DNA of 64,000 nucleotides from IMG/VR virus record IMGVR_UViG_3300002835_000007, positions 1-64,000 of that record; one strand, written 5' to 3'. Positions 12,962 through 41,842 of this stretch are shown piece after piece. The position numbers and the translations under genes are program-made. Each line of letters starts with the position of its first letter. Positions within the stretch are counted from its first letter, which is position 1. The notes under the pieces were generated by a model, which saw only the letters and a program-made list of their open reading frames with translations, was not told where the DNA came from and searched no databases.

Positions 12962-12964
12962 GAC

Positions 12965-13786
12965 ATGAGTTATAGAGAATTAGATACAATATTATACGTT
13001 GATAAGATTAGCGTTGGGTATGAAGGAAAAACAATTCTTAAAGATATTTCAATCATTGAGAAAAATATAGTAAGAGATGGTCACGATTCCACTGGACAAA
13101 CAATTGCGGTGTTAGGTCGTTCTGGTAGAGGTAAATCTACATTGTTCAAAGCGTTGACTGGATTGGTTAAACCAATGTCTGGCCAGATTTTGATAAGTGA
13201 TATGGCTACAGAAGTTGCAGATGATGCAAAAATATTGGCTGAAGGTGATGTAGGGTTTGTTGACCAAAAATACACTTTGTTCAGACATAAAACAGTATAT
13301 CAGATTTGTCAATATGCATTAAGAAAAAGTAAAACGACAAAACAAGAGAAAGATAAGTTGATTACTGAGTTTTTAACTGAATGGGGTTTATTAGAACACA
13401 AAGATAAATACTCATGTGAGTTATCTGGTGGTCAAAGACAAAGAACTGCAATCATTGAGCAAATGTTATCATCTAAACATTTTATGATTTTGGATGAACC
13501 ATTCTCTGGATTGGACGTTGGAAACATTGAGAAAGTTAAAACATCTTTCCAAAAGATTTTGGATGCTGACGAATATAACACAATCATATTTTCAACACAC
13601 GATATCAGATTGGCTGCTGAATTGGCTGATAGTATTTATATTATTGGTAACCCAGAGGGTACAACTGAATATTCAACAGTCTTAAAACACTATGATTTAA
13701 AGAAAATGGGATTAGCTTGGACACCATATGGTGAGGGTCATAGAAAAGTGGTTGCTGACATAAAAGAAATATTATTAAAATCGTAA
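12965..13786 (+). CDS. ABC transporter ATPase (TauB/SsuB-like)
   Basis: GRSGRGKST, LSGGQRQR, ILDEPFSGLD, STHD. Confidence 0.93.
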   Translation: MSYRELDTILYVDKISVGYEGKTILKDISIIEKNIVRDGHDSTGQTIAVLGRSGRGKSTLFKALTGLVKPMSGQILISDMATEVADDAKILAEGDVGFVDQKYTLFRHKTVYQICQYALRKSKTTKQEKDKLITEFLTEWGLLEHKDKYSCELSGGQRQRTAIIEQMLSSKHFMILDEPFSGLDVGNIEKVKTSFQKILDADEYNTIIFSTHDIRLAAELADSIYIIGNPEGTTEYSTVLKHYDLKKMGLAWTPYGEGHRKVVADIKEILLKS

Positions 13787-24048: not shown

Positions 24049-24113
24049 AAAAGAATCCGAATAAGTTGCTTATTCGGATTTTCTTTTGTACATTTGTATT
24101 ATAAAATTAAAAT

Positions 24114-25103
24114 ATGGAAGCAAAATCAAATATTAACCCATCCGATTATGAAATCGGTGTAGTGGTTGCTAGATTCCAAGTGCATAAATTGCATGAAGGA
24201 CAAAGAAATTTACTTAACATGGTTTATAAAAACCACAAGAAAGTAATTATATTTTTAGGTGTTTCAGTAATATCTGGAACTAAGAATAATCCATTAGACT
24301 TTGCATCACGCAAAGCAATGATACAAGAAGCTTATCCTAAAGCAGTTGTATTACCACTTAAAGACAATCGCTCAGATGCTAAATGGTCACAAGTGCTTGA
24401 TGCTGAAATCAAAACACCTTATGGTGATTTATCAGCGGTATTGTATGGTAGTCGTGACTCTTTTATTCCTTATTATAGTGGTAAAAATCCAGTAATTGAA
24501 TACACAACAGATGTATTTTATTCTGGTACTGAAGTGCGTAAAGAAGTGTCAAGAGAAATATTGGCATCAGAAGACTTTAGAGCTGGTGTAATCCACGCAA
24601 CTTATGCTGCTAGACCAGTAACATATCCAACAGTAGATATCACCGTATACAACGACAAAGGACAAATCCTTATGGCTAAAAAACCAAACGAAGAGTTTTA
24701 TCGTTTTATTGGTGGGTTTGTTGATAGAACTGATGAGTCTTGGGAACAAGCAGCTAAACGTGAGTTTAAAGAAGAAACTGGTGGAAACGCTGAAATTGAC
24801 GATATTAGATATGTTTGTAGTGCTGCTATAAATGATTGGCGTTATGGTAAAACAGAGTCTGGTATTATGACAACACTTTTCATTGGTAAGTTCTTATGGG
24901 GACGTATTGAACCATCTGATGATATTGCATCATTGCATTGGATAAACCCATCTGACGTTTATAGTAGTGAAATCATGCCAGAACACCAAGAGTTATTTGA
25001 ATCTTTGACACGTTTTTTACATAGAACTGAATTAATCAGTAAAAACACTGGTGAAGGTAAAATAAAAGAAGCAAAAGCTAAATACGGAGAAAGTATCGCA
25101 TGA
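24114..25103 (+). CDS. nadM: bifunctional NMN adenylyltransferase / Nudix ADP-ribose pyrophosphatase
   Basis: ARFQVHKLHEGQ, NPLDF..R, SGTEVR; Nudix box GGFVD...AAKREFKEETG. Confidence 0.92.
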   Translation: MEAKSNINPSDYEIGVVVARFQVHKLHEGQRNLLNMVYKNHKKVIIFLGVSVISGTKNNPLDFASRKAMIQEAYPKAVVLPLKDNRSDAKWSQVLDAEIKTPYGDLSAVLYGSRDSFIPYYSGKNPVIEYTTDVFYSGTEVRKEVSREILASEDFRAGVIHATYAARPVTYPTVDITVYNDKGQILMAKKPNEEFYRFIGGFVDRTDESWEQAAKREFKEETGGNAEIDDIRYVCSAAINDWRYGKTESGIMTTLFIGKFLWGRIEPSDDIASLHWINPSDVYSSEIMPEHQELFESLTRFLHRTELISKNTGEGKIKEAKAKYGESIA

Positions 25104-25438
25104 AATTAGCAGTAATTGGTAGCAGAGGTTTTAATGACTATGAGTTGGTTAAAGAAACTTTAAAACATCATACAATAACATTATTGGTTAGTGGTGGTGC
25201 GAAAGGTGCTGATTCATTGGGTGAAAGATATGCAAATGAAAATAACATTCAAACACTTATCTTTAAACCAGATTGGAAGAAACATGGACCAGCAGCTGGT
25301 CCACTTAGAAATACCGATATTGTTAACAATGCCGATACTATCATAGCATTTTGGGATGGTGAAAGTAAAGGAACCAAAGATAGTATCACAAAAGCTGAAA
25401 AATTAGGAAAAAATATAATAATAATAAATACAAAATAG
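25100..25438 (+). CDS. SLOG-family protein (DUF2493/YspA-like)
   Basis: IGSRGF, VSGGAKGAD, AGPLRN, AFWDGESKGT. Confidence 0.88.
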   Translation: MKLAVIGSRGFNDYELVKETLKHHTITLLVSGGAKGADSLGERYANENNIQTLIFKPDWKKHGPAAGPLRNTDIVNNADTIIAFWDGESKGTKDSITKAEKLGKNIIIINTK

Positions 25439-25439
25439 T

Positions 25440-27059
25440 ATGCAATCAGAAACTAGAAGATTAAAAAGAAGTTTAGCACTTAAAGAAGTGATTAAAACTA
25501 GATTGGCAGAAGCAATTAAAAACAAAGATTGGTCTTCAATCGAAACATTAGAAGGTCTTATCACAAAAGTATTGGATAAACCTAACAACCTTGTACTTAT
25601 GGGTGATGCGTATAAATACTCACACCATAAATTCTATGAGGATAACACAACAACAGTTTATTCATACATGGAGTCACGTGGTGGTCGTTTCCAAGAAACT
25701 GTATGGTATGGTCTTGAAATGTTCATTAAAGAATATTTAGAAGGTGTTGCAATCACACAAGAAGAATTAGATGAAGCATATGAGTACTTAGGTACTAAAC
25801 ATGGTGTATTTGGTCGTGATGATGTGTTTGATAAATCTAAATTCCAATACATTATAGATGTTCATGGTGGTAAACTACCAGTACGTATTAAAGCAGTACA
25901 AGAAGGTACAGTTGTAGGTGTTAAAAACGTTCTTATGACTATTGAGAACACTGACCCTAATTGTTATTGGTTAACTAACTTTTTAGAAACAATCATGATG
26001 CAATTATGGTATCCAATTACGGTTGCAACATTGTCACGTGAAGTTAAGAAAATTGTTATCGAATACTACCAAAAAACATCTGCGTTACCACAACACATTA
26101 TGGATACAGTTATTGAGTTCGTATTAAACGATTTCGGTTTTAGAGGTGTATCATCAGTACAATCAGCTGGTTACGGTGGTTCAGCACACTTAATTAATTT
26201 TATGGGTTCTGACACAACAGTTGCATCAAAACGTATCTGTGAATACTATAATACTGACACAATATTTGGTTTATCAGTTCCAGCAACTGAACACTCTATC
26301 ATGACAATGAAAGGTGAAGAAGGTGAAGTTGAAATGATGAGAAGAACACTTGAGAAATACCCTACTGGAATTGTAGCGTGTGTATCTGACTCTTACCACA
26401 TCTTACGTGCATGTTCTGAGAAATGGGGAACTGAGTTACGTGATTTGATTTTATCAAGACCATCAGAACCTGGAAATCAACTGGTTATTCGTCCAGATAG
26501 TGGTCACGTTGTCAACACATTAAAAGAAGTGTTTGCTATATTGTTTGATAAATTTGGTTACACTGTGAATGATAAAGGGTTCAAATTGTTACCACCACAA
26601 GTTCGTGTAATTCAAGGTGATGGTGTAAACATCAATTCAATTCGTGAGATTTACGAAGAATTATACAGATTAGGTATTTCTGCTGAGAACATCGTGTTTG
26701 GTATGGGTGGTAAATTGTTACAAGCTGATATTAATAGAGATACACAAAACTTTGCAACTAAAGCATGTTTCGCTGTCGTAAATGGTGAACAACGTGATTT
26801 GGTTAAATCACCAACAGAAGTTGATGAAAATGGTGAATTAAAACCATCATTCAAGAAATCTAAACAAGGTCGTTTGAAGTTGGTTAAACACTATACAAAT
26901 GGTCAATACTACACTGTAACATCATTGGAAGATGGATATGAATCTGCACATGATGAATTGAGAACTATTTTTGAAGATGGTAAACTATTGGTTGAAACGA
27001 AGTTTGAAGATATTCGTAGTAGAGCTAAAATTTTTAAATTAAACGTAGAATTAGTATAA
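25440..27059 (+). CDS. nadV: nicotinamide phosphoribosyltransferase
   Basis: DAYKYSH, DFGFRG, SVPATEHS, VSDSY, IRPDSG, IQGDG, FGMGG. Confidence 0.95.
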   Translation: MQSETRRLKRSLALKEVIKTRLAEAIKNKDWSSIETLEGLITKVLDKPNNLVLMGDAYKYSHHKFYEDNTTTVYSYMESRGGRFQETVWYGLEMFIKEYLEGVAITQEELDEAYEYLGTKHGVFGRDDVFDKSKFQYIIDVHGGKLPVRIKAVQEGTVVGVKNVLMTIENTDPNCYWLTNFLETIMMQLWYPITVATLSREVKKIVIEYYQKTSALPQHIMDTVIEFVLNDFGFRGVSSVQSAGYGGSAHLINFMGSDTTVASKRICEYYNTDTIFGLSVPATEHSIMTMKGEEGEVEMMRRTLEKYPTGIVACVSDSYHILRACSEKWGTELRDLILSRPSEPGNQLVIRPDSGHVVNTLKEVFAILFDKFGYTVNDKGFKLLPPQVRVIQGDGVNINSIREIYEELYRLGISAENIVFGMGGKLLQADINRDTQNFATKACFAVVNGEQRDLVKSPTEVDENGELKPSFKKSKQGRLKLVKHYTNGQYYTVTSLEDGYESAHDELRTIFEDGKLLVETKFEDIRSRAKIFKLNVELV

Positions 27060-27547
27060 TGACAACAGATAAATTTATATTCTTTTGGGGAGGGACATAC
27101 AGTCAATGGTGTCCTTCCACATTTGAAATCGGAGGTGTAAAATATAATTGCTGCGAGCAATATATGATGGCACAAAAAGCATTATTATTCAATGACATAG
27201 AAAGTCACAAGATGATTATGTATGCTACTAGTCCACGTGACCAAAAAGCATTTGGACGTAGAGTAAAAGGGTTTGACAAAGACAAATGGGAAGCTGTTTG
27301 TAGAGAAATCGTTTACGATGCAAACTATGCCAAGTTTACTCAAAACCCATCTATGATGGCTGAGTTACTGGCAACTGGTGATAGAGAAATTGTAGAAGCT
27401 AGTCCAGAGGATAAAATCTGGGGAATTGGATTGCATGAAAACGATGCTAGAGTTCACGACAAGTCAAAATGGCAAGGAACCAATTGGTTAGGTGAAGCTA
27501 TCATGCAAGTAAGAGAAAAATTAAGAACTATTAAAATAGAAATGTAA
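27059..27547 (+). CDS. NADAR (YbiA-like) protein
   Basis: SQW, EQYMMAQKA, KFTQN, EASPEDKIWGIG, GTNWLG. Confidence 0.93.
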   Translation: MTTDKFIFFWGGTYSQWCPSTFEIGGVKYNCCEQYMMAQKALLFNDIESHKMIMYATSPRDQKAFGRRVKGFDKDKWEAVCREIVYDANYAKFTQNPSMMAELLATGDREIVEASPEDKIWGIGLHENDARVHDKSKWQGTNWLGEAIMQVREKLRTIKIEM

Positions 27548-28005
27548 TGATTAGATACGTAGAAGGCGATTTAGTGAAAATGGCCAAAGAAGGAGAATTC
27601 GATGTAATAGCACACGGTTGTAACTGTTTCTGTGCTATGGGTGCTGGTATTGCACCACAAATTAAAAATGCTTTTCCAGAAGCATATGAGGCTGATTGTG
27701 CAACAGTGGCTGGTGATGAATCAAAAATGGGTACTATTACTCATACGGTTAATTCTACACCGATAGTTGTAAACATTTATTCTCAATATGACACCAAAGG
27801 TAGACGTAGTGGTAACATGGATTTAGACTATGATGCTTTACGTTCTGGTTTAAAAGAGATGAAAGCTAAATTTTCTGGTAAAACAATTGGGTTACCGATG
27901 ATTGGTGCTGGATTGGCTGGTGGTGATTGGGATATCATTGAGAAAATAATTGAAGAAGAAATGATTGGTGAGTATGTAACAATCGTTCAATACGTTCCAT
28001 GGTAA
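27547..28005 (+). CDS. Macro domain protein
   Basis: GDL, HGCNCFCAMGAGIA, PMIGAGLAGGDW. Confidence 0.93.
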   Translation: MIRYVEGDLVKMAKEGEFDVIAHGCNCFCAMGAGIAPQIKNAFPEAYEADCATVAGDESKMGTITHTVNSTPIVVNIYSQYDTKGRRSGNMDLDYDALRSGLKEMKAKFSGKTIGLPMIGAGLAGGDWDIIEKIIEEEMIGEYVTIVQYVPW

Positions 28006-28586
28006 TAATCTTTGTTAATAATCCAATGCAAGATGCAAACACTCTTGAACCGCAATTAATTGATGGTAGAGTAGTTTATTGGACTGTGGTTAGTGAGTGT
28101 ATGAAATCAAATGAAACATTCAAAGAATGGTTGGTTAGAAAGGAAGAAAGAATCAATACACATCCTAATTATAGTTCCATTGAAGGTCTTTTAATCTATG
28201 ACATGCAACCAATTGTGTCTACCCCTTACGAAGGGGTGACACATGGTGGTATGATTATTAGGTATGCTTTTTTAAAGAAAAAAGAAGAAAACATTTGATT
28301 TTTAATTTATTTTTAGTACATTTGTAACATGAAAATAGTTTTTGAAAATTTAGAAGAAGCGTTAAAAATACCATCTTCAGCATACACAATTAGAACTGAA
28401 ACTCTTAAAGTTGAAGAGACTTTATTAGAGTGGATGAATAGAAAGAATGAAATGTTATTAAATGACCCTAGATACGCTAACGTTGAAGGTGTTATTTTAT
28501 ATGACGTTGAGTCGTATTTTGATTCACCATACAAAGATAAGGTACATAGTGGGTTAATCCTAAAATATAAGTATTTAAGAAAATGA
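27999..28586 (+). CDS. two tandem paralogous hypothetical proteins (27999-28298, 28329-28586)
   Basis: Shared ET..EW..RK......P.Y..(I/V)EG...YD......PY....H.G pattern. Confidence 0.7.
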
Positions 28587-29056
28587 AAGTAATATTTTTA
28601 GATATTGATGGAGTATTAGCAACAACATCTTGTTATGGTAAAGGAAAAAACAACAAGTGGGGTGCTTATATGTTTGACCAAAAAGCTGTTGTTTATCTCA
28701 ATTTTATACTTAGTGAGACTGGTGCTGAAATCATTTTATCATCTGATTGGCGAAATCAATATACTTTGCATGAAATGCGTGAAATTTTTTGTCATAACGG
28801 AGTGTTGAAAGGTCCGATAGGGTTTACACCATCGTTAAAAACATATAAGGGTGATAATCTTGAAGGTGGTCGTGCTGATGAAATAAATGCATGGTTAGAA
28901 ATTAACGCATGGAAGAATGATATCAAATGGGTTGCCATTGATGATTTGAATATGGATGAATGGTTGTACCCTAACTTTGTTCATTGTCCTAATGAACATG
29001 AAGGAATCAAAAAACAAAACATAAAAGATAAAATAATACAAATATTAAATGGATAA
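28583..29056 (+). CDS. HAD-family protein (Swiss-Army-Knife RNA repair-like)
   Basis: FLDIDGVL, LSSDWR, R..EI..WL, AIDD. Confidence 0.85.
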   Translation: MKVIFLDIDGVLATTSCYGKGKNNKWGAYMFDQKAVVYLNFILSETGAEIILSSDWRNQYTLHEMREIFCHNGVLKGPIGFTPSLKTYKGDNLEGGRADEINAWLEINAWKNDIKWVAIDDLNMDEWLYPNFVHCPNEHEGIKKQNIKDKIIQILNG

Positions 29057-29483
29057 TTGGGATAAGAAGTTCATCAAGTTGTGTCAACACATTGCTGAAT
29101 GGAGCAAGGATAAAAATAAAAAAGTTGGTGCTGTAATAGTTGATAATGACAATGTAGTTATATCAATGGGTTATAATGGAATACCAAGAGGTTGTGATGA
29201 TACTGAAGAGTGTCGTTATGAAAGACCAACAAAATATTTGTTCACAGAGCATGCTGAACGAAATGCAATATACCATGCAGCAAGACATGGTGTATCATTG
29301 AAAGATTGTAAAATGTATGTAACTTTGTTCCCATGTGCTGATTGTGCAAGAGCAATGATTCAATCTGGAATAACAAAAATAATAGCACCAGAACCAAATT
29401 TAGACCACGAAGTATGGGGTGTACACTTCAAGGCTGCGATTCAAATGATGGAGGAAGCTAATATCGAAATAATTTTAATTTAA
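29049..29483 (+). CDS. dCMP deaminase
   Basis: GYNG, HAERNAI, PCADC. Confidence 0.93.
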   Translation: MDNWDKKFIKLCQHIAEWSKDKNKKVGAVIVDNDNVVISMGYNGIPRGCDDTEECRYERPTKYLFTEHAERNAIYHAARHGVSLKDCKMYVTLFPCADCARAMIQSGITKIIAPEPNLDHEVWGVHFKAAIQMMEEANIEIILI

Positions 29484-29662
29484 TGGAAACAGTTAAAGTA
29501 GGCTTGGCCAATGTTGGTGAAAAATTAATGCCAGTTGATATTGTCATCAAATGGATGCCAACTGATATTGTATATGCTGGTGATACAGTGTTTTTTAAAA
29601 ATGAAAAGTCCTATTATTCAATGAATTATATGGACTTTATGAGAATATTTAATTTATAAAAT

Positions 29663-30106
29663 ATGAGTATAGTAAGGTCAATAAAAATTAATCATTATGA
29701 ACACATGGTTAATAGAAATTGGGATAAAACATATTGGGCGTTTGACATCCATGGTACAATCCTAAAACCAAATTACGAGTATGGAAACATACCTAAAGAG
29801 TTTTACCCATTTGCTAAAGAAACACTTCAGTTTATTAGCAAGATGGAAGATGTTGTAATGATTCTTTACACATGTTCACATCCACATGAGATTGAACAAT
29901 ATATTGAGTATTTCAAAGAGAATGATATTCATTTTGATTACATAAATGAAAACCCAGAGATAGCTACAAACCTAGAAGGTTATGGTAACTACGATAAAAA
30001 ACCTTACATGAATGTATTATTTGAAGACAAAGCTGGATTCGATGGTGACAGTGATTGGGATAGTGTTTTATGGTTATTAACTAGTAAAAATGGCGAGAAT
30101 ATCTGA
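29663..30106 (+). CDS. HAD-like hydrolase
   Basis: AFDIHGTI, LYTCS, INENPE, FEDKAG. Confidence 0.75.
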   Translation: MSIVRSIKINHYEHMVNRNWDKTYWAFDIHGTILKPNYEYGNIPKEFYPFAKETLQFISKMEDVVMILYTCSHPHEIEQYIEYFKENDIHFDYINENPEIATNLEGYGNYDKKPYMNVLFEDKAGFDGDSDWDSVLWLLTSKNGENI

Positions 30107-30448
30107 CATACAAAGATACAATAAAGGTAGAAAAGATTTAACTAGGGATAATGCCGATTTTGAAACATTAAGGTTTAAAAATGAAAATGGTGATGTTATG
30201 GTTATTAAACCACAAGAGGTTAGAGAAGTTTTACATGATTTTATTGATAGTGAGATAGGTTTTTTGGGTGATGCAATGAAAACTCAAATAAAAGAAAGAT
30301 TAGAGTTCAAAATTAAACAAGTTGAAAGAACTTTAATTGAACATTTAGATGATAAAATAAATAAAATTGCAGAATCAATATTAGAAAAAACTATTGATAG
30401 AATAGCAGAAGAAGAAATAAATAGAAGGGTTTTAGAAAAAATTAAAAA

Positions 30449-30766
30449 ATGTTTATGAAAAGAAGAAGAAGAATTGGTTTAATTATTTTTGCAATTGTAA
30501 TTGCAATATTTTTGTTAAGTAGTTGTGCCGACACATCACATGTTAAACAATGTTTACCACCAACAGAACACACTTATGGTTTCTGGGGTGGTACATGGCA
30601 TGGTATGATAACAGTTCCATCATTTATTGGTAGTCTTATTTGGGACGATGTTGCTGTATACGCAGTAAATAATAATGGTGGATGGTATGATTTTGGATTT
30701 GTAGGTGGATTATTTTTCATGCTAAAATTAGTTGGGATTGGTAATAAAAAAGTTAAAGAAAAATGA
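30449..30766 (+). CDS. putative lipoprotein/membrane protein
   Basis: LLSSC lipobox; GFWGGTWHG...NNGGWYDFGF. Confidence 0.7.
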   Translation: MFMKRRRRIGLIIFAIVIAIFLLSSCADTSHVKQCLPPTEHTYGFWGGTWHGMITVPSFIGSLIWDDVAVYAVNNNGGWYDFGFVGGLFFMLKLVGIGNKKVKEK

Positions 30767-31527
30767 AAAAGAAAGTAGTAGTATTTAGTGGTGCTGGATT
30801 AGATAGAGAATCTGGTATCTTAACGTTTCGTGACTCTAAAGATGGGTTATGGAACAATTATAAAGTTGATGAAGTTGCGACAAAAGAAGGATGGTCTAAA
30901 AACCGTGAAAAAGTTTTGGCGTTTTACAACGAAAGACGTAGAGAATTACCTAGTGTTGAACCAAACGATGCTCACAGAGCATTGGTGCGTTTAGAAGAAG
31001 GATATAGTGTATTAAACGTGACGCAAAACGTAACTGATTTGTTAGAACGTGCTGGTGCAAGTGATATTATTCATTTACATGGTGAGTTAACCAAAGCAAG
31101 AGGTTGCTTCCATAAATCAGAAGGTTTTGACACTAATTACATTGTTAAAGAAATTGGTTATAACGACATTAACATCGGTGATAAATGTGAACATACTGAT
31201 TCACAATTAAGACCACATGTTTGTTGGTTTGGTGAATGGCCTTATGACACAGATAGAGCTTATGATGAAGTTCCATTTGCAGACATTCTTATCATTGTTG
31301 GTACAAGTTTAGAGATAACTTATACGTTATCAATGTTAGGTCAATTAAGACATAAAGTTTTAAGTGGTGAATGTGAAGTTTATTATGTTGACCCAAATCC
31401 ATCAACTCACATGGAAGCTTATGGGATTAAACCTAATTACATTAGAAAAGTTGCTAGTGAAGGGTTAAATGAATTAGTTGACGAATTATTAAAAAGAGAA
31501 GAAAATCAAAAAAATATTGCTAATTAA
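30763..31527 (+). CDS. Sir2/CobB NAD-dependent deacylase
   Basis: SGAGL..ESG..TFR, TQNV.DL.ERAG, HLHG, LRPHV.WFGE, GTSL. Confidence 0.93.
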   Translation: MKKKVVVFSGAGLDRESGILTFRDSKDGLWNNYKVDEVATKEGWSKNREKVLAFYNERRRELPSVEPNDAHRALVRLEEGYSVLNVTQNVTDLLERAGASDIIHLHGELTKARGCFHKSEGFDTNYIVKEIGYNDINIGDKCEHTDSQLRPHVCWFGEWPYDTDRAYDEVPFADILIIVGTSLEITYTLSMLGQLRHKVLSGECEVYYVDPNPSTHMEAYGIKPNYIRKVASEGLNELVDELLKREENQKNIAN

Positions 31528-31569
31528 TAATTTATTTAGTATATTTGAATTAATAAAATAAAAATAGAT

Positions 31570-31941
31570 ATGGAATATTACACGTTTGAAGGAGTTATCA
31601 AAGAGATTTTTGATACTCAAGAATTTAAAAACAATTTCAAGAAAAGAGAAGTTGTATTAGAAACAGAAGAGGATTATCCTCAATTAATAAAATTTGAGTT
31701 TACCGATGAAAATGGTATTAACAAATTAGATGACCATGCTGCTGGTGAAAAAGTTAAGATTGCTTTCTTACTAAAAGGTAGTGAATGGCAAGGTAAATAT
31801 TTTACTAATTTAAGAGGTGTTGCAATTGCTTCATCAGAAGAACCAACTTCTACTGATAAACCTAAAAAAGACACTAAGAAAGATGTTTTGTCTTCAATGA
31901 CAAAAGTTAACAATAACGAAGAAGATGAATTACCATTCTAA
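31570..31941 (+). CDS. DUF3127 OB-fold protein (SSB-like)
   Basis: FKKREVVL..YPQ..FEF...G.EW.GKYF; acidic EDELPF tail. Confidence 0.85.
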   Translation: MEYYTFEGVIKEIFDTQEFKNNFKKREVVLETEEDYPQLIKFEFTDENGINKLDDHAAGEKVKIAFLLKGSEWQGKYFTNLRGVAIASSEEPTSTDKPKKDTKKDVLSSMTKVNNNEEDELPF

Positions 31942-32557
31942 TCATGAGTGTAGTTAAATTTGAATTGAAAGAAGAACACGTAAAGTTGTTAAAATATTTA
32001 CGTTGGAGTAAATCAAAAGAACTTATTGTTAATATTTCTGATGATGAAGATTCTGTTCCATTTGGTTTTGATACTATCTATGAAGCAATAGATACAATAT
32101 TAAACGGTAAACCAGAAGGGTTTGACCCATTTGAAGCAGATGATGTTATTGAATATAGTGATGAACAAAAAGCTGAATGGGATAAATTATATGATGAGTT
32201 GCCAACAGCATTAGATGTCATATTACATAATCAATCATTTGATTTGGGGCGTTATAAGACCAAGTATCATGACAGAAACTGGAAAAAGATGAATTAATTT
32301 TCATCTTTTTTTGTTTATATGAAATATTATTCATACATTTGTAGAAACTAAAAAATAAATAAATATGAAAAATGTAAAAAGTTACTGTATCATAAAGAAA
32401 GTGGTACAATCAAATGGGAAAACATTAAACGTGCTAATGTTAGATATTAACACTGAAGTATTGGAATTCGATAATTTACAAGATGCTGAAAAATTTGCTG
32501 CATTGATGACACAAAACTCTGACTCTGGTTGGGAATACATCGTAAAAGAAATATAAT

Positions 32558-33604
32558 ATGAATCAATCGTTATTATTTACCTTAGATGGTAAAACAGAAT
32601 TGGCTGAAGCCATTATTGACTCTGCTAATTTATTTAGCACGGAACATGAAATTAGTTTAGGTTATTTAAACAAACAAAAATTCTCCGATGGTGAGTTATG
32701 TGTTGATTTCACTGACTCAGTTAGAGGTAAATCAGTGTTTTTGTTATCTAGTCCAAACACATCAGATGCAATCATCAACTTAGCATTGGCTATTGATGCT
32801 GCAAAACGTGGTGGTGCTAAAGAGATTATACCTATCTTACCATATTTCCCATATGCTAGACAAGATAAGAAAGACCAAAGCAGAGGACCAATTGGTGCTA
32901 AGGTTATGGCTGAAATTATTGAACAACGTGGTGCAACATCAGTAATCACTTTTGATTTACACGCTGACCAGATACAAGGGTTCTTTAATATACCAGTTAC
33001 ACACATTGAAGGTAAGCATGTTTTCGACAGTTACATCAACGATACTATCAAAAACTTTACTGGTGGTGAAGTTGTATTGTGTGGACCAGATGCTGGTTCT
33101 GGTAAACGTGTTAAACGTATGCGTGACCAAATCAATAAAAGATATGGTGTTAACCTAAACATTGTCATGATTGACAAAACTAGGAAAAAAGCCAACGTGA
33201 TTGATGAAATGATTATTATTGGTGATGTTAAAGGTAAACATGTTATCATATTGGATGATATGGTTGATACTGCTGGTACGTTATGTAAAGCTGCTGAAGT
33301 ATTGAAAGATGCTGGTGCGTTGACTGTAAGGGCGATAATTGCACATGGTGTGTTATCTGGGCCAGCAGTTGAACGAATTGGTGAAAGTAAATTAGCTGAA
33401 TTAGTAATAAGTGATTCATTACCAATGAAAGATGCTAAAGAATTATGTCATAAAGAATTTAATGAAACAAAATGTCATCATATTATAAAAGGGTGCGAGA
33501 AAACAACTGTTATTAGTGTAGCACAACAAATTGGGATGGGAGTTTCTGCATCAATCAATAAACTAAGCTACGAAGCATTAAAATCAATTAAAGCAGTATA
33601 TTAA
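32558..33604 (+). CDS. prs: ribose-phosphate pyrophosphokinase
   Basis: FSDGE, PYFPYARQDK, DLHADQIQGFF, PDAG, DDMVDTAGT, HGVLSG. Confidence 0.93.
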   Translation: MNQSLLFTLDGKTELAEAIIDSANLFSTEHEISLGYLNKQKFSDGELCVDFTDSVRGKSVFLLSSPNTSDAIINLALAIDAAKRGGAKEIIPILPYFPYARQDKKDQSRGPIGAKVMAEIIEQRGATSVITFDLHADQIQGFFNIPVTHIEGKHVFDSYINDTIKNFTGGEVVLCGPDAGSGKRVKRMRDQINKRYGVNLNIVMIDKTRKKANVIDEMIIIGDVKGKHVIILDDMVDTAGTLCKAAEVLKDAGALTVRAIIAHGVLSGPAVERIGESKLAELVISDSLPMKDAKELCHKEFNETKCHHIIKGCEKTTVISVAQQIGMGVSASINKLSYEALKSIKAVY

Positions 33605-34631: not shown

Positions 34632-34876
34632 AAAAAAAACATTATGAGTGAAGAAAAAGAATATAAAGACGAAACATTCGTTTTGAGTGCTGCACAACAC
34701 AAAAAGTACGATGAATGGAGGAAAGAAAAGAATGAAAAGGATGGGGAAGTATATGTAGGTGCCATTGGTGGTGCCTACTCCTTTTGTTTCACACCAACTG
34801 GATTGGGTGATATGGTAGTTGTTAAGTGTGCTGATGGTACACAATTAGATTTAACAGAATACGAATATTGGTGATT

Positions 34877-35419
34877 ATGAATGATAATGAATTATTTTGT
34901 GCTTGTGTAAAAGGTAATACACAAGCACAAGGTTTATTATATGAAAAATATAATAAACATCTATTTAACATTTGTTTAAGATACCTAGGTAATGAATATG
35001 ACGCTGATGATTGTCTTCAAGATGGGTTTTTACATATTTTAAACAAGTTAACTAAAATGGATGCCACAACTAATATTAAATTAAATGGTTGGTTAAGTGT
35101 GGTAATGAAAAACTATACATTAGATGTGTTAAGAAAGAAAAAGAATGAAATGTCATTTGAATCAGTTGAATATTTTACAACTGAAGTAGTTGATGAAGAG
35201 GAGTTTATGGTTTCTATTTCGCAAAATACATTATTAGAATTAATAAATAATTTATCACCACAATTTAAGAAAGTGTTTGAAATGTATGCTATTGATGAAT
35301 TACCACATAAAGATATTGCAAAAGAATTAGGTATTAGTGAGAGTACATCTAAGACTAATTACCATAGAGCAAGAAAAAAATTAAAAAAAGCTTTATTTCA
35401 TTTGGATATTATAAATTAA
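34877..35419 (+). CDS. ECF RNA polymerase sigma factor
   Basis: LYEKY...DADDCLQDGF...GWL..N...D; region 4 HKDIAKELGISESTSK..YHRAR. Confidence 0.9.
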   Translation: MNDNELFCACVKGNTQAQGLLYEKYNKHLFNICLRYLGNEYDADDCLQDGFLHILNKLTKMDATTNIKLNGWLSVVMKNYTLDVLRKKKNEMSFESVEYFTTEVVDEEEFMVSISQNTLLELINNLSPQFKKVFEMYAIDELPHKDIAKELGISESTSKTNYHRARKKLKKALFHLDIIN

Positions 35420-37434: not shown

Positions 37435-37887
37435 ATGATTAAAACAATAGCAGCTGGTGTATTTATTATTAATAAAAATAATAAAGTATTGATTTGTCAC
37501 CCAACAAATCATAAACCAAATACATGGAGCATACCAAAAGGTAAGATTGAAGCATTAGAAACTTTTGCTGAAGCTTGTATAAGAGAAACTTTTGAAGAAA
37601 CAAACATAGATTTATCAGATTATAAAGATAAATTGATTATGTTGGATAGTGTGAACTATTCACATAAAAAGAAAATGTTAATTCCTTTTGTTTTATTTGA
37701 GAATGATTGTGAGTTATTAGATTTAACTATGGTAACTTTACAATGTAACTCAAATGTTCCAGAAGATAGAGGTGGATTTCCAGAAATGGATGGTTATGAT
37801 TGGGTTACAATTGATGAAGCAAGAAAACTATTACATCCAACACAAGTTGCATGTTTAGATAAGGTTAAACAATTATTTTCAAGATGA
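37435..37887 (+). CDS. Nudix hydrolase
   Basis: WSIPKG...ACIRETFEETN; FPEMD. Confidence 0.9.
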   Translation: MIKTIAAGVFIINKNNKVLICHPTNHKPNTWSIPKGKIEALETFAEACIRETFEETNIDLSDYKDKLIMLDSVNYSHKKKMLIPFVLFENDCELLDLTMVTLQCNSNVPEDRGGFPEMDGYDWVTIDEARKLLHPTQVACLDKVKQLFSR

Positions 37888-39451: not shown

Positions 39452-39832
39452 ATGACTAATAAAGTTAAAATAAAATTAAAAGACATAGTTCAATCTAAAA
39501 AACAGATTCATTGGTCCAAAAAACAATTAAATATGATTGATGGGATTTCTGATAATTATGATGAGGATATAAGTTTAATATGGGTCACAAAATTTAACGA
39601 AATTATTGATGGACATCATAGATATGAAATATTGATTAATAAATTTGGTGGTGAACATGAGATAACGGTAAGACAATTTAATGTGTCAAAAAAAATATTT
39701 AAAACAATAGTTTATATTTTTTTACCATTATCTTTAATTATTTTATTACCTTTGTATTTAATTATTGAACGTTTTAAATTTAAAAAATGGCAAAGAAAAA
39801 AAGAGAACATAGAATTAATGATGAAATCATAG
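39452..39832 (+). CDS. ParB/Srx-like domain with C-terminal TM helix
   Basis: IIDGHHRY. Confidence 0.55.
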   Translation: MTNKVKIKLKDIVQSKKQIHWSKKQLNMIDGISDNYDEDISLIWVTKFNEIIDGHHRYEILINKFGGEHEITVRQFNVSKKIFKTIVYIFLPLSLIILLPLYLIIERFKFKKWQRKKENIELMMKS

Positions 39833-40284
39833 CAAGAACTGTAAGAGTTGATGGTGTTATTATGTCTATTCAAGAAGCATTACATAAAGCTGAACAATCT
39901 GAAATGGATTTGGTTTTAATTAATGATAATGCTGAACCTAAAATATGTCGCATATTAAACTATCAAAAGTTTTTATACGAACAAAAAAGAAAAGACAAAG
40001 AAAAGAGTAAATCACTTGAACTTAAAGAAATAAAGTTAGGACCAAACACATCTGAAAATGATTTATCTTATCGTTCTAAACACATTATTGAGTTTTTGGA
40101 TAAAGGACATAAAGTAAAACTTACTATGCAGTTCAGAGGTCGTGAAATGGCCTTTGTTTCCAAAGGTGAGTTGATTATGTTAAAATTGATTGATTCGATT
40201 TCAGAACATGGGTTGCCAGAAAGTATGCCAAAGATGGAGGGTAAAAGAATGCAATGTCTTCTAAAACCAAAAGTTAAGAAATAA
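39787..40284 (+). CDS. infC: translation initiation factor IF-3
   Basis: INDEI, DLVLI..A.P.ICRI.NY.KF.YE, KEIKL, GHKVK..FRGRE. Confidence 0.93.
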   Translation: MAKKKREHRINDEIIARTVRVDGVIMSIQEALHKAEQSEMDLVLINDNAEPKICRILNYQKFLYEQKRKDKEKSKSLELKEIKLGPNTSENDLSYRSKHIIEFLDKGHKVKLTMQFRGREMAFVSKGELIMLKLIDSISEHGLPESMPKMEGKRMQCLLKPKVKK

Positions 40285-40959: not shown

Positions 40960-41323
40960 AAAAGTTTTGTGTACATTTGTAGATATTTACTAATATGAAC
41001 GTTATGAATATGTTTAAAAGTAGGAAAGGTAAGATAAAAAGTGTTTTAGAATATAAACTTGGTAATAAGTTAGATGATAATGATATCAATGACATATTAG
41101 AAGTTTTTGATGTGTATCAAAAAGATAATTTAGATAGCATTGATAAATTAAAGCGAGATAAAGTTTACGAAACAAAAAGAATTAGTGGTGCATTGAAACA
41201 AACAATCAATGCTCATGGACCAATTACTAAACAATTCATTGGTTCAGCAACCAAAAGGGTTTATGGGTCATTGTTAAACAACGAAAAGAAAGAAAGTTTT
41301 ATAATAAGATTATGGAAAAAGAT

Positions 41324-41842
41324 ATGGAAAAAACAAAAATAGCAATATTTGATTTTGATGGGACATTGGTTAACACACCGATGCCAGATGAAGGTAAAGA
41401 TTTATACAAAGAAAAGACTGGCAAAGAATGGCCGCATAAAGGTTGGTGGTCTAAACCAGAATCATTAGACTTAGATGTTTTTGAAATGCCTACAGTTGAT
41501 GATGTAATTGTTGATTACGTATTAGAAGCAGCAACAAAAGATACAATCATTGTTATGTTGACTGGTCGTATGCAAAACTTATCAGATAGTGTTAAAAAAA
41601 TATTAGATGCACATGGTCTTATGTTTCACGAATACCATTTCAACAGAGGTGGCAGCACTGAATATGCTAAAATGAATACTATGGATGATTTACTTAATAA
41701 ATACCCATCAGTTAGAGAAATAAAAATGTGGGATGATAGAGATGAACACATTCCAATCTTCAAAGAATGGGGAGATAAAAAAGTATCATCTGGTAGATTA
41801 GACAAGTTTAAAATTAAACATGTTATTCAAAATAGACATTGA
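41324..41842 (+). CDS. HAD-family protein (RNA repair-like)
   Basis: FDFDGTLVNTP, GWWS, LTGR, WDDR. Confidence 0.8.
   Translation: MEKTKIAIFDFDGTLVNTPMPDEGKDLYKEKTGKEWPHKGWWSKPESLDLDVFEMPTVDDVIVDYVLEAATKDTIIVMLTGRMQNLSDSVKKILDAHGLMFHEYHFNRGGSTEYAKMNTMDDLLNKYPSVREIKMWDDRDEHIPIFKEWGDKKVSSGRLDKFKIKHVIQNRH

What the first reader, a model, noticed from the sequence alone, without database searches (positions are those of the whole stretch)
24114..33604. Closed-loop NAD+ rebuilding pathway plus ADP-ribose erasers
Seen in sequence: NadM-Nudix, SLOG, NAMPT, NADAR and Macro are contiguous, with Sir2 and Prs nearby. Established chemistry: Nudix turns ADP-ribose into R5P, Prs makes PRPP, NAMPT makes NMN from nicotinamide, and NadM makes NAD+. 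Both products of defensive NADases (Thoeris, DSR, SIR2/TIR effectors) could therefore be recycled, extending the described NARP2 (Nampt+Nmnat) design. NADAR and Macro domains can reverse DarT-type DNA ADP-ribosylation. The anti-defence role here is inference.
Basis: partly seen in the sequence, partly recalled or inferred. Interest (0 to 1): 0.6.

Follow-up and report, generated by a model that had tools for sequence, protein, structure and literature searches.

The report
Jumbo-phage NAD+ salvage cluster with Prs
A roughly 355 kb freshwater phage carries the known two-enzyme NAD+ rebuilding pathway (NARP2) in a conserved gene block that also holds a genuine PRPP synthetase, a sirtuin and several ADP-ribose-processing enzymes, so it could recycle both halves of broken NAD+, but each part and the chemistry are already known and the anti-defence role is untested.

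Summary
All seven named genes are present, intact and co-directional at the stated coordinates. The block is conserved in related 200-370 kb phage contigs.

The core is a NARP2-type pair. Nampt groups with KVP40-like NadV, not Namat. NadM-Nudix matches the two solved bifunctional NMNAT/ADPR-pyrophosphatases.

Prs is a canonical ribose-phosphate diphosphokinase derived from Bacteroidota housekeeping Prs. It is not an Adps (NARP1) enzyme.

Three points change the interpretation:
- The ADPR to R5P to PRPP to NMN to NAD loop was published for bacteria in 2008.
- The Macro protein's nearest characterised relative is Adpp, the phage ADPR-1''-phosphate phosphatase (40% identity), not DarG.
- Sir2 is a CobB-like NAD+ consumer, so the loop may also serve the phage's own NAD+ use.

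NADAR keeps the catalytic residues of phage anti-DarT1 NADARs.

Prs lies within 10 kb of NadM-Nampt in 20 of 47 non-redundant relatives. The full gene set occurs in only 4.

Verdict: a new variant of a known kind (NARP2 plus a dedicated Prs and ADPR-derivative hydrolases). Interest is moderate. Function is inferred from sequence only.

The parts
24052..24082 (+). Terminator-like hairpin (14 pairs, then a T-rich tail) between the upstream AAA ATPase gene and NadM. It may mark the start of a separate transcription unit.
   Evidence: The next + strand terminator-like sites are at 34755-34933, and none lies between NadM and Prs. This is a consensus scan only.
24114..25103 (+). NadM-Nudix: bifunctional NMN adenylyltransferase (residues ~8-135) fused to a Nudix ADP-ribose pyrophosphatase (residues ~170-300).
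   Evidence: The best PDB matches are 2qjo and 2qjt, both bifunctional NMNAT/Nudix. The SxTxxR motif (S137, T139, R142) and the Nudix box (E211, R216, E217, E220, E221) are invariant in 16 homologues. The HxGH motif reads H27-E-G-Q30.
25100..25438 (+). SLOG protein of the YAcAr (YspA/cpYpsA-related) family, 112 aa. Its substrate is unknown; it is predicted to bind or process an ADPR-type nucleotide.
   Evidence: (PF10686, 60.6 bits). It sits between NadM and Nampt in relatives.
25440..27059 (+). Nicotinamide phosphoribosyltransferase (Nampt/NadV), NARP2 type.
   Evidence: and the tree. The equivalents of D219, H247, R311 and D313 of mammalian NAMPT are conserved. The protein groups with KVP40-like NadV and excludes Namat (SH-aLRT 99).
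27059..27547 (+). NADAR domain protein of the YbiA subfamily, a probable ADP-ribosyl N-glycohydrolase.
   Evidence: E33 and K40 correspond to T4 AdfN E36 and K43 (PMC11825919). E113 is the YbiA-type glutamate (PMC11125620).
27547..28005 (+). Stand-alone Macro domain protein, Adpp-like. Probably hydrolyses ADPR-1''-phosphate or another ADPR derivative.
   Evidence: It is 40% identical over its full length to Vibrio phage Gary Adpp (KNV71_gp137). Its fold class is BT1257/SCO6735/DarG/TARG1.
27999..28586 (+). Two small unknown ORFs (99 and 85 aa) that look like tandem paralogues.
   Evidence: No family match was found.
28583..29056 (+). HAD-type phosphatase of the HAD_SAK_2 family (Swiss-army-knife RNA-repair type), with canonical motif I (DIDGV).
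   Evidence: (93.8 bits). Conserved in relatives.
29049..29483 (+). dCMP/cytidine deaminase. This is nucleotide metabolism and probably not part of the NAD pathway.
29663..30106 (+). o147: a minimal HAD-like protein of the BT0820 family with a D-x-H variant of motif I. It is the most faithful companion of NadM-Nampt.
   Evidence: pLDDT 90.7; 2obb, E 7.7e-5. Present in 30 of 47 non-redundant loci.
30763..31527 (+). Sirtuin, CobB-like, with the catalytic His and NAD+ motifs intact and a degenerate zinc ribbon. It is a phage-encoded NAD+ consumer.
   Evidence: E. coli CobB 1s5p, 141 bits; no PADLOC defence-SIR2 match.
31944..32297 (+). o117: a conserved unknown ORF that co-occurs with Prs.
   Evidence: No family or fold match.
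32558..33604 (+). Ribose-phosphate diphosphokinase (canonical Prs): makes PRPP from R5P and ATP.
   Evidence: The RF loop, DLHA, KTRKKAN flexible loop and DDMVDTAGT R5P loop are all conserved. The C-terminal module is retained.

Best explanation
The region is a NARP2-type NAD+ salvage module of a freshwater jumbo phage of about 355 kb, probably one that infects Bacteroidota. It sits in a conserved, co-directional block that supplies its own PRPP.

**Core steps**
- Nampt condenses nicotinamide with PRPP to give NMN.
- The N-terminal domain of NadM adenylates NMN to NAD+.
- The fused Nudix domain splits ADP-ribose into AMP and ribose-5-phosphate.
- The canonical Prs, 5.5 kb downstream of Nampt, turns ribose-5-phosphate into PRPP.

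Both products of NAD+ glycohydrolysis can therefore be rebuilt into NAD+. The cost is ATP only, with no drain on the host PRPP pool.

**Sources of the broken NAD+**
- Host NADase defences.
- The phage's own CobB-like sirtuin.

**Accessory hydrolases**
- The Adpp-like Macro, the YbiA-type NADAR, the YAcAr SLOG and two HAD-type phosphatases most likely convert ADPR derivatives into free ADPR that the Nudix domain can use. Candidate substrates are ADPR-1''-phosphate from RES-type NADases, O-acyl-ADPR from the sirtuin, and base-linked ADPR.
- NADAR may in addition strip guanine-linked ADPR from phage DNA.

**Shown here**
- Family membership.
- Intact catalytic motifs.
- Conservation of the gene block.

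**Inferred**
- Every enzymatic activity.
- The coupling of Prs to the pathway.
- Any anti-defence effect.
For: **Core enzymes**
- Nampt scores above NCBI's curated cut-off (540 against 405) and scores 386-401 bits to solved NAMPTs.
- The equivalents of D219, H247, R311 and D313 are conserved.
- In the tree Nampt sits with KVP40-like NadV, and Namat lies outside (SH-aLRT 99).
- NadM-Nudix has as its only strong PDB relatives the two bifunctional NMNAT/ADPR pyrophosphatases 2qjo and 2qjt.
- The SxTxxR motif and the Nudix box are invariant.

**Prs**
- It scores above the cut-off of NF002320 (307 against 297) and TIGR01251 (268 against 113).
- All catalytic loops align with human PRPS1.
- It is 41-51% identical to Bacteroidota housekeeping Prs. 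It is only 23-34% identical, over a partial length, to Adps-type phage proteins.
- Adps lies across a branch of 2.6+2.6 substitutions per site.
- The C-terminal module and the DTAGT loop are kept, unlike in Adps (PMC13586617).

**Linkage**
- A 72%-identical relative has the identical gene order.
- The NadM+Nampt+Prs triad occurs in 19 of 47 non-redundant loci, down to 44% NadM identity.
- No terminator-like site lies between NadM and Prs.

**Accessory genes**
- Macro is 40% identical to the characterised Adpp (bioRxiv 10.64898/2026.01.28.702374).
- NADAR keeps its catalytic E, K and E residues (PMC11825919, PMC11125620).
- Sir2 is CobB-like.

**Chemistry and precedent**
- The recycling loop and prs-nadV operons are described in PMC2330246.
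- NARP2 and its PRPP cost are described in bioRxiv 10.1101/2024.02.11.579819.

**Expression**
- Contigs from an RNA library, from a close relative, cover NadM, Nampt and o147.
Against: - No activity has been measured.
- Prs is separated from Nampt by 12 ORFs, including unrelated functions (dCMP deaminase, a DUF3127 protein labelled ssDNA-binding by PHROGs). It lies in a general nucleotide-metabolism and host-takeover region (DHFR, deaminase, sigma factor, IF3). It may therefore simply feed nucleotide synthesis.
- Prs is absent within 10 kb in 27 of 47 relatives, and the full gene set occurs in only 4.
- The co-occurrence counts are confounded by shared ancestry.
- The last His of the NMNAT HxGH motif is Gln in this phage.
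- The closest bacterial Prs genes are not linked to nadV, so there is no inherited functional coupling.
- The RNA-library contigs may be DNA carry-over, and they do not cover SLOG, NADAR or Macro.
- Only 58% of the genome is held.
Confidence: 0.6

Rival explanations
1. The genes are independent auxiliary metabolic genes. Nampt + NadM form an ordinary NARP2/NAD+ salvage pair. Prs is there to boost PRPP for the nucleotide synthesis that a 355 kb genome needs, alongside DHFR and dCMP deaminase. There is no dedicated ADPR-to-NAD+ loop.
For: The region is a mixed metabolic and host-takeover block with DHFR, thioesterase, dCMP deaminase, ABC transporter, sigma factor, IF3 and RNase II/R. Prs is 5.5 kb from Nampt with 12 ORFs between them. 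Prs is missing near NadM-Nampt in 27 of 47 relatives. The nearest cellular Prs are housekeeping genes with no nadV linkage.
Against: PRPP made for any purpose is still available to Nampt, so the loop closes chemically regardless. The same order and strand are kept down to 44% NadM identity in 19 loci. No terminator-like site separates the genes. Dedicated prs-nadV pairing has bacterial precedent (PMC2330246).
Confidence: 0.3
2. Sir2, the HAD_SAK phosphatases, Macro, NADAR and Nudix form an NAD+-dependent RNA-end repair and clean-up system. In this model the sirtuin acts like KptA on 2'-phosphates and the hydrolases degrade ADPR>P and ADPR-1''P. The NAD+ salvage genes only supply the cofactor.
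For: Iyer et al. 2022 predict exactly this for a phage sirtuin clade linked to Swiss-army-knife HAD phosphatases (PMC9503650 section 3.7.3). HAD_SAK_2 (28583-29056) and HAD_SAK_1 (41312-41842) are present. Relatives carry a 2H/Acb1-like gene upstream.
Against: No RNA ligase, KptA or 2H/Acb1 gene was found in the 206 kb held, although that is only 58% of the genome and two of those four family searches also found nothing in any control genome. The sirtuin here is closest to the CobB deacylases. Sir2 and HAD_SAK_2 are not adjacent. The model itself is an untested prediction.
Confidence: 0.15
3. NADAR and Macro are orphan antitoxin-like enzymes that remove DarT-type ADP-ribose from phage DNA (NADAR for guanine/DarT1, Macro for thymine/DarT2), independently of NAD+ salvage.
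For: Orphan phage NADARs of several clades neutralise DarTG1 (PMC11825919). YbiA-family NADARs hydrolyse guanine-ADPR in vitro (PMC11125620). The window's NADAR keeps the catalytic residues. The Macro belongs to the BT1257/SCO6735/DarG/TARG1 class, and SCO6735 cleaves thymidine-ADPR (PMC9411070). The best PADLOC and NCBIfam names for the Macro are DarG.
Against: The Macro scores only 48 bits against the DarG model's cut-off of 250, lacks DarG's DarT-binding domain, and is far closer to Adpp. In vitro NADAR activity does not predict protection in vivo (PMC11125620). Iyer et al. argue that phage Macro and NADAR mainly target soluble ADPR derivatives. Tight linkage to NadM and Nampt fits a metabolite role.
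Confidence: 0.3
4. The Prs-like and Nampt-like genes are a NARP1 pair (Adps + Namat) that rebuild NAD+ directly through ADPR-PP.
For: The Pfam domains are the same as in NARP1 (PF14572, PF18127, PF04095).
Against: Prs is a canonical Prs by curated cut-offs, motifs, C-terminal module and tree. Nampt excludes Namat. The two genes are not adjacent, whereas 97% of Adps genes have Namat in the immediate vicinity. An NMNAT is present, as in NARP2.
Confidence: 0.03

Closest known systems
NARP2 (Vibrio phage KVP40 NadV + NatV; Lee et al. 2017; Osterman et al. 2024, bioRxiv 10.1101/2024.02.11.579819)
   Same: A Nampt of the same clade plus an NMNAT-Nudix fusion, adjacent and co-directional. The expected chemistry is the same: nicotinamide + PRPP to NMN to NAD+.
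   Different: NadM-Nudix is too diverged from the KVP40-type proteins to be found by tblastn at E 1e-5. The HxGH motif ends in Gln. A SLOG gene is inserted between the two genes. The block adds a genuine Prs, a sirtuin, NADAR, Macro and HAD phosphatases.
Bacterial non-deamidating NAD recycling and the NrtR regulon (prs-nadV, nadM-nadV operons; Rodionov et al. 2008, PMC2330246; Huang et al. 2008, PDB 2qjo/2qjt)
   Same: The same closed loop: ADPR to Rib-P (Nudix) to PRPP (Prs) to NMN (NadV) to NAD (NadM), with a Prs committed to NadV.
   Different: It is encoded by a phage. No NrtR regulator is present. The phage Prs descends from Bacteroidota housekeeping Prs, not from the gamma-proteobacterial nadV-linked paralogue.
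NARP1 and NARP1-AP (Adps + Namat, with or without Adpp; Osterman et al. 2024 and 2026)
   Same: The domain families are the same. The window's Macro is a 40%-identical homologue of Adpp, the ADPR-1''-phosphate phosphatase.
   Different: The Prs is not Adps and the Nampt is not Namat. The pathway goes through R5P, PRPP and NMN rather than ADPR-PP. The Macro accompanies NARP2-type genes rather than sitting inside a NARP1 operon.
Phage NAD+-ADPr gene neighbourhoods of Iyer, Burroughs, Anantharaman and Aravind 2022 (PMC9503650)
   Same: NADAR next to NadM/NadV. Co-occurrence of SLOG, Macro, NADAR and Nudix in jumbo phages. A sirtuin together with an HAD_SAK phosphatase.
   Different: That survey does not include Prs or PRPP supply (no mention of PRPP). 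Here all the elements lie in one 9.5 kb block.
AdfN, orphan phage NADARs that counter DarTG1 (PMC11825919)
   Same: A stand-alone phage NADAR with the catalytic Glu and Lys retained.
   Different: The window's NADAR is of the YbiA subfamily (Glu in the last strand), not the T4 gp30.3 type (His). It is linked to NAD+ salvage genes. Its activity is untested.

Membership tests
NARP2 | Nampt belongs to the KVP40-type Nampt clade rather than the Namat clade | tested here: met
   In the tree of 59 sequences, the window groups with the KVP40-like D490 NadV and the Namat sequences of phages allfine and ICP1 lie outside (SH-aLRT 99). tblastn identity is 39% to KVP40-like phages and 27-33% to phages of the kinds that carry NARP1, such as Felixounavirus and ICP1.
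NARP2 | An Nmnat (NatV-like NMNAT, here fused to Nudix) is encoded with the Nampt | tested here: met
   NadM-Nudix lies 337 bases upstream of Nampt. It matches NCBIfam bifunctional NMNAT/Nudix models and PDB 2qjo/2qjt. Pairing is found in 72 of 80 related loci.
NARP2 | Intact catalytic motifs of both enzymes | tested here: inconclusive
   Nampt: the equivalents of D219, H247, R311 and D313 are present. NMNAT: SxTxxR is invariant, but HxGH reads H-E-G-Q. The family consensus is H-E-G-H, and Gln recurs in several clades.
NARP2 | Makes NAD+ from nicotinamide, PRPP and ATP, and rescues phages from NAD+-depleting defences | not testable with these tools
   This requires enzyme assays and plaque assays.
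NARP1 (Adps + Namat) | The Prs-like enzyme belongs to the Adps clade: remodelled PP loop, no C-terminal alpha11-alpha12 module, degenerate allosteric sites | tested here: not met
   It scores above the curated Prs cut-offs. The loops are canonical. The C-terminal module is present and DTAGT is kept. Adps lies across a very long branch.
NARP1 (Adps + Namat) | Adps and Namat are immediate neighbours | tested here: not met
   Prs and Nampt are 5.5 kb apart with 12 ORFs between them. The Nampt is not Namat.
NARP1-AP Adpp (ADPR-1''-phosphate phosphatase) | Macro protein homologous to Vibrio phage Gary KNV71_gp137 | tested here: met
   40% identity, 59% positives, E 1e-37 over 156 residues.
NARP1-AP Adpp (ADPR-1''-phosphate phosphatase) | Located inside a NARP1 operon, and dephosphorylates ADPR-1''P | tested here: not met
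   There is no NARP1 here. The closest annotated homologues (50%) are stand-alone genes in Phapecoctavirus and Seunavirus. Activity cannot be tested with these tools.
NARP3 (PnuC + NadR) | PnuC-like transporter and NadR-like kinase/adenylyltransferase | tested here: not met
   No PF04973 match in the 206 kb record. The NMNAT is fused to Nudix, not to a kinase.
Class I ribose-phosphate diphosphokinase (Prs) | Curated family score, plus the RF loop, DLH motif, catalytic flexible loop (K-x-R-K-K-A-N) and R5P loop (DDxxDTxGT) | tested here: met
   NF002320 scores 307 against 297 and TIGR01251 scores 268 against 113. The alignment to human PRPS1 is and to E. coli and Bacteroidota Prs.
Class I ribose-phosphate diphosphokinase (Prs) | C-terminal allosteric Ser-x-Ser...Phe motif | tested here: not met
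   The window reads K-L-S-Y-E-A-L where bacteria have S-I-S-x-x-[FY]. There is an extra Cys/His-rich insertion upstream. Regulation may therefore differ. Catalysis is not affected by this test.
NADAR, YbiA subfamily | Catalytic Glu and Lys seven residues apart, and Glu in the last strand | tested here: met
   E33, K40 and E113 are present. PF08719 scores 183 bits and TIGR02464 scores 164 bits (PMC11825919, PMC11125620).
DarG (DarTG2 antitoxin) | Macro domain plus a C-terminal DarT-binding domain, with a curated equivalog score | tested here: not met
   The protein is 152 aa and matches only the first 146 positions of the 338-position model. It scores 48 bits against a cut-off of 250.
Sirtuin deacylase (CobB-like) | GAGxSxxSGIxxFR, QN and catalytic HG motifs | tested here: met
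   The sequence reads GAGLDRESGILTFR, TQNV and HLHGEL. E. coli CobB 1s5p scores 141 bits.
Sirtuin deacylase (CobB-like) | Four-cysteine zinc ribbon | tested here: not met
   Only C114 and C151 align with the zinc-ligand region. The NCBIfam scores are below the equivalog cut-offs.
Defence-type SIR2 NADase (ThsA, DSR, SIR2-HerA) | Match to PADLOC SIR2 effector models | tested here: not met
   No PADLOC family matches at E 1e-3.

The most novel reading that the evidence does not exclude
The block is a self-sufficient 'ADPR-derivative funnel'. The Adpp-like Macro, the YbiA-type NADAR, the YAcAr SLOG and two HAD-type phosphatases would convert whatever ADPR species host immunity produces into plain ADPR. 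Those species include ADPR, ADPR-1''-phosphate from RES enzymes, cyclic or base-linked ADPR, and O-acyl-ADPR. The Nudix, a dedicated Prs, Nampt and NadM would then rebuild NAD+ from that ADPR using ATP alone. This would be a generalist NARP2 that removes the pathway's published weakness, its drain on host PRPP, and covers non-canonical NADases. The unannotated HAD-like o147 would be a core third component.
Probability: 0.22. Interest if true: 0.65.

Novelty: new variant of a known kind. Interest (0 to 1): 0.42.

Why it matters
NARP2 is described as metabolically costly because it consumes host PRPP (Osterman et al. 2024). A phage lineage that pairs NARP2 with its own canonical Prs and an ADPR-splitting Nudix would avoid that cost. 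It would recycle both NADase products, which ports a bacterial recycling loop into a virus.

The finding that an Adpp-type Macro accompanies NARP2-type genes suggests that handling of ADPR-1''-phosphate is not restricted to NARP1-AP.

The cluster also gives a compact set of candidates for enzymology on poorly understood phage families: the YAcAr SLOG, the BT0820-like HAD with a D-x-H motif, and the YbiA-type NADAR.

None of this changes the current framework. It extends it, and it rests on sequence inference only.

Tried and rejected
- **Megablast:** a search of the 9.5 kb region against 50,697 phage records found nothing.
- **Prs as Adps (NARP1):** rejected.
- **Prs as a descendant of the bacterial nadV-linked prs paralogue:** rejected. 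None of the 80 closest cellular prs loci carries nadV, nadM or any other cluster gene except an occasional deaminase or sigma factor.
- **Macro as the in-operon Adpp of NARP1-AP:** only homology holds. The closest annotated homologues are stand-alone genes.
- **Other phage-encoded NAD+ consumers or RNA-repair partners in the 206 kb record:** I found no NAD-dependent ligase, ADPrib_exo_Tox ART, KptA, Acb1/2H, Rnl1, Rnl2 or PnuC. Three of these family searches (ART, Acb1, Rnl1) found nothing in any control genome either, so they are uninformative. In addition, 42% of the genome is missing.
- **o117:** it folded poorly (pLDDT 72) and has no structural match.
- **Primary papers:** Lee et al. 2017 (KVP40) and Huang et al. 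2008 (NadM-Nudix structures) are not held. Statements about the ADPR preference of those Nudix domains rest on their titles as cited in PMC9503650 and on my own knowledge.
- **Fisher tests of co-occurrence:** reported but not relied on, because the loci are phylogenetically related.
- **Promoter scan:** sigma-70-like sites were fewer than in shuffled sequence (77 against 92), so it is uninformative, as expected for a probable Bacteroidota phage.
- **Unused tools:** I did not use the exhaustive protein search or the complex predictor. Nothing hinged on absence of relatives or on a binding claim.

Full report
**1. What is there**

The window is AT-rich (about 31% G+C) and almost every gene lies on the + strand. 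It is the first 64 kb of a 205,931-base IMG/VR virus record that CheckV rates as 58% complete. That implies a genome near 355 kb. Relatives sit on contigs of 200-370 kb. The same DNA occurs in many lake and freshwater metagenomes.

- NadM-Nudix, 24114-25103
- YAcAr-type SLOG, 25100-25438
- Nampt, 25440-27059
- NADAR, 27059-27547
- Macro, 27547-28005
- Sir2, 30763-31527
- Prs, 32558-33604

The first five abut or overlap. Between Macro and Prs lie two small paralogous unknowns, an HAD_SAK_2 phosphatase, a dCMP deaminase, further unknowns, and a DUF3127 protein that PHROGs labels an ssDNA-binding protein.

A strong terminator-like hairpin precedes NadM (24052-24082). The next + strand ones follow at 34755-34933.

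**2. Is it more than chance**

A relative whose NadM is 72% identical has exactly the same order, from the upstream AAA ATPase to the downstream sigma factor. Relatives at 60-70% identity keep NadM, (SLOG), Nampt, NADAR, Macro, HAD and the deaminase. In them Sir2 and Prs come and go.

I ran tblastn of each window protein against 80 IMG/VR loci found with a NadM alignment. Restricted to 47 non-redundant loci with a full 10 kb downstream flank, the counts are:

| Gene | Loci (of 47) |
|---|---|
| Nampt-type | 42 |
| o147 (unannotated) | 30 |
| Prs | 20 |
| o117 | 19 |
| Sir2 | 16 |
| Macro | 16 |
| HAD_SAK_2 | 12 |
| Deaminase | 12 |
| NADAR | 10 |
| SLOG | 9 |

The NadM+Nampt+Prs triad occurs in 19 loci, down to 44% NadM identity. 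The complete set occurs in 4. These loci are related, so the counts show conserved synteny in a lineage, not independent associations.

**3. The core is NARP2-type**

- Nampt exceeds NCBI's curated cut-off (540 against 405 bits).
- It scores 386-401 bits to solved NAMPTs.
- It conserves the equivalents of D219, H247, R311 and D313.
- In a tree it sits with a KVP40-like NadV and excludes the Namat proteins of phages allfine and ICP1 (SH-aLRT 99).
- NadM-Nudix has as its only strong solved relatives the bifunctional NMNAT/ADP-ribose pyrophosphatases 2qjo and 2qjt.
- Across 16 homologues the SxTxxR motif and the Nudix box are invariant.
- The HxGH motif is H-E-G-H in the family consensus but H-E-G-Q in this phage and several other clades. 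The recurrence of Gln among otherwise conserved sequences suggests that it is tolerated. That needs an assay.

**4. Prs is a true Prs**

- It passes the curated cut-offs of two Prs models.
- It aligns with human PRPS1 through the RF loop (FPYARQDKKD), DLHA, the catalytic flexible loop (KTRKKAN) and the R5P loop (DDMVDTAGT).
- Adps-type phage proteins match it at only 23-34% identity over residues 93-298. They lie across a very long branch in the tree.
- According to PMC13586617, Adps lacks the C-terminal alpha11-alpha12 module. The window's enzyme keeps that module and the DTAGT loop, whereas both Adps sequences end early and read DGGRT or DGAAS.
- Its closest cellular relatives (41-51% identity) are almost all Bacteroidota housekeeping Prs. 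None of them sits beside nadV or nadM.

The phage lineage therefore took an ordinary Prs, probably from its host phylum. It did not take the nadV-linked paralogue of gamma-proteobacteria.

Differences from bacterial Prs are a Cys/His-rich insertion of about 20 residues and loss of the Ser-x-Ser allosteric motif. These hint at altered regulation.

**5. The accessory genes**

- **Macro.** It belongs to the BT1257/SCO6735/DarG/TARG1 class and to a family present in about 3,000 phage records. It is 40% identical over its full length (E 1e-37) to KNV71_gp137 of Vibrio phage Gary. That protein is Adpp, shown to dephosphorylate ADPR-1''-phosphate made by RES-type NADases (bioRxiv 10.64898/2026.01.28.702374). 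Against the DarG model it scores 48 bits where the cut-off is 250, and it lacks DarG's second domain.
- **NADAR.** It is of the YbiA subfamily. It retains the Glu and Lys mutated in T4 AdfN and the last-strand Glu (PMC11825919, PMC11125620). All tested NADARs remove guanine-linked but not thymine-linked ADPR. Protection in vivo is enzyme-specific.
- **Sir2.** It is closest to E. coli CobB (141 bits) and has intact NAD+ and catalytic motifs. It has only two of the four zinc cysteines. It matches no defence-type SIR2 model. It is the only phage-encoded NAD+ consumer I could find in the part of the genome held.
- **o147.** It folds confidently (pLDDT 90.7). It resembles BT_0820 and capless HAD phosphatases. 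Its invariant residues sit at the four HAD motifs, but motif I is D-x-H.
- **SLOG.** It remains a YAcAr protein of unknown substrate.

**6. Mechanism**

The best-supported reading is a NARP2 module with its own PRPP supply:
- nicotinamide + PRPP to NMN (Nampt)
- NMN to NAD+ (NadM)
- ADPR to AMP + R5P (Nudix)
- R5P to PRPP (Prs)

The accessory hydrolases probably turn ADPR derivatives into free ADPR. NADAR may also clean phage DNA.

The chemistry is established. Rodionov et al. 2008 describe this recycling route and dedicated prs-nadV operons in bacteria (PMC2330246). Osterman et al. 2024 note that NARP2 consumes PRPP at a metabolic cost, which a phage Prs would offset.

Family membership, motifs and synteny are shown here. 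All activities, the coupling of Prs to the pathway, and any anti-defence effect are inferred.

Contigs from a freshwater RNA library, from a close relative, cover NadM, Nampt and o147 but not SLOG, NADAR or Macro. DNA carry-over cannot be excluded.

**7. Rivals**

- Prs and the NAD genes may be independent auxiliary genes in a general metabolic block with DHFR, deaminase, sigma factor, IF3 and RNase II/R.
- Sir2 with the HAD_SAK phosphatases, Macro, NADAR and Nudix may be the NAD+-dependent RNA-repair system predicted by Iyer et al. 2022. No RNA ligase, KptA or 2H gene was found in the held sequence.
This is plausible for NADAR and weaker for Macro.
- A NARP1 reading is excluded by sequence.

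**8. Novelty**

- NARP2, the Nudix fusion, the NADAR/SLOG/Macro neighbourhoods (PMC9503650), Adpp and anti-DarT1 NADARs are all published.
- I could not find a description of a genuine Prs conserved with NARP2-type genes in a phage lineage, nor of an Adpp-type Macro beside NARP2-type genes. No paper in the searchable library combines the four terms. Absence from that library is not proof.
- The only cultured relative, Tunturiibacter phage Tunturi_5, has just the NadM-like/Nampt pair.
- I rate this a new variant of a known kind, of moderate interest.

Noticed in passing
window 29663-30106: The unannotated ORF o147 is a BT0820-family, capless HAD-like protein whose motif I is D28-x-H30 instead of DxD. 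It is the most faithful companion of NadM-Nampt (30 of 47 non-redundant loci), and RNA-library contigs cover it. Its substrate is unknown.
   Followed up: partly
L016:6326-8002, L027:10965-13598 and 12 other related loci: In 14 relatives the gene after NadM-Nudix is a very divergent Nampt-like PRTase of 545-880 aa. It is only 21-27% identical to the window's Nampt, with weak NAMPT_N and NAPRTase matches. It forms a third deep clade beside Nampt and Namat.
   Followed up: partly
L001:13114-13905, L002:15374-15904: Relatives at 60-70% NadM identity carry a small type-I phosphoribosyltransferase (176-263 aa, PF00156) between NADAR and Macro. It is absent from the window.
   Followed up: no
window about 33446-33505 (Prs residues ~297-316) and the Prs C-terminus: The Prs of this subclade has a Cys/His-rich insertion (CHKEFNETKCHHIIKGC), possibly a metal-binding knuckle. 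It also lacks the Ser-x-Ser allosteric motif of bacterial Prs.
   Followed up: partly
window 24192-24203 (NadM residues 27-30): The nucleotidyltransferase HxGH motif reads H-E-G-Q. His and Gln alternate at the fourth position among clades of this phage family.
   Followed up: partly
window 27999-28298 and 28329-28586: Two adjacent small ORFs (99 and 85 aa) share a C-terminal sequence pattern and cross-hit in tblastn, so they look like tandem paralogues. No family match was found.
   Followed up: no
window 37435-37887: A second, stand-alone Nudix hydrolase lies 3.8 kb downstream of Prs. Its weak best matches are MutT-like.
   Followed up: partly
window 12191-13786, 34868-35419, 39787-40284, 41312-41842, 42488-44473: The phage encodes an ABC-transporter permease and ATPase, an ECF-like sigma factor, a translation initiation factor IF3, a second Swiss-army-knife HAD (SAK_1) and an RNase II/R homologue.
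   Followed up: no
window 24114-30100 against run X24: In a freshwater metatranscriptome library, contigs 90-99% identical cover NadM (24172-24938), Nampt (25528-26786) and o147 (29687-30094). None cover SLOG, NADAR or Macro.
   Followed up: partly
window 32558-33604, 27547-28005, 29663-30106: Three independent best matches point to Bacteroidota: Prs to Prevotella, Bacteroidales and Flavobacteriaceae; Macro to BT1257; o147 to BT_0820. Together with about 31% G+C and the lake habitat, this suggests a Bacteroidota host.
   Followed up: partly
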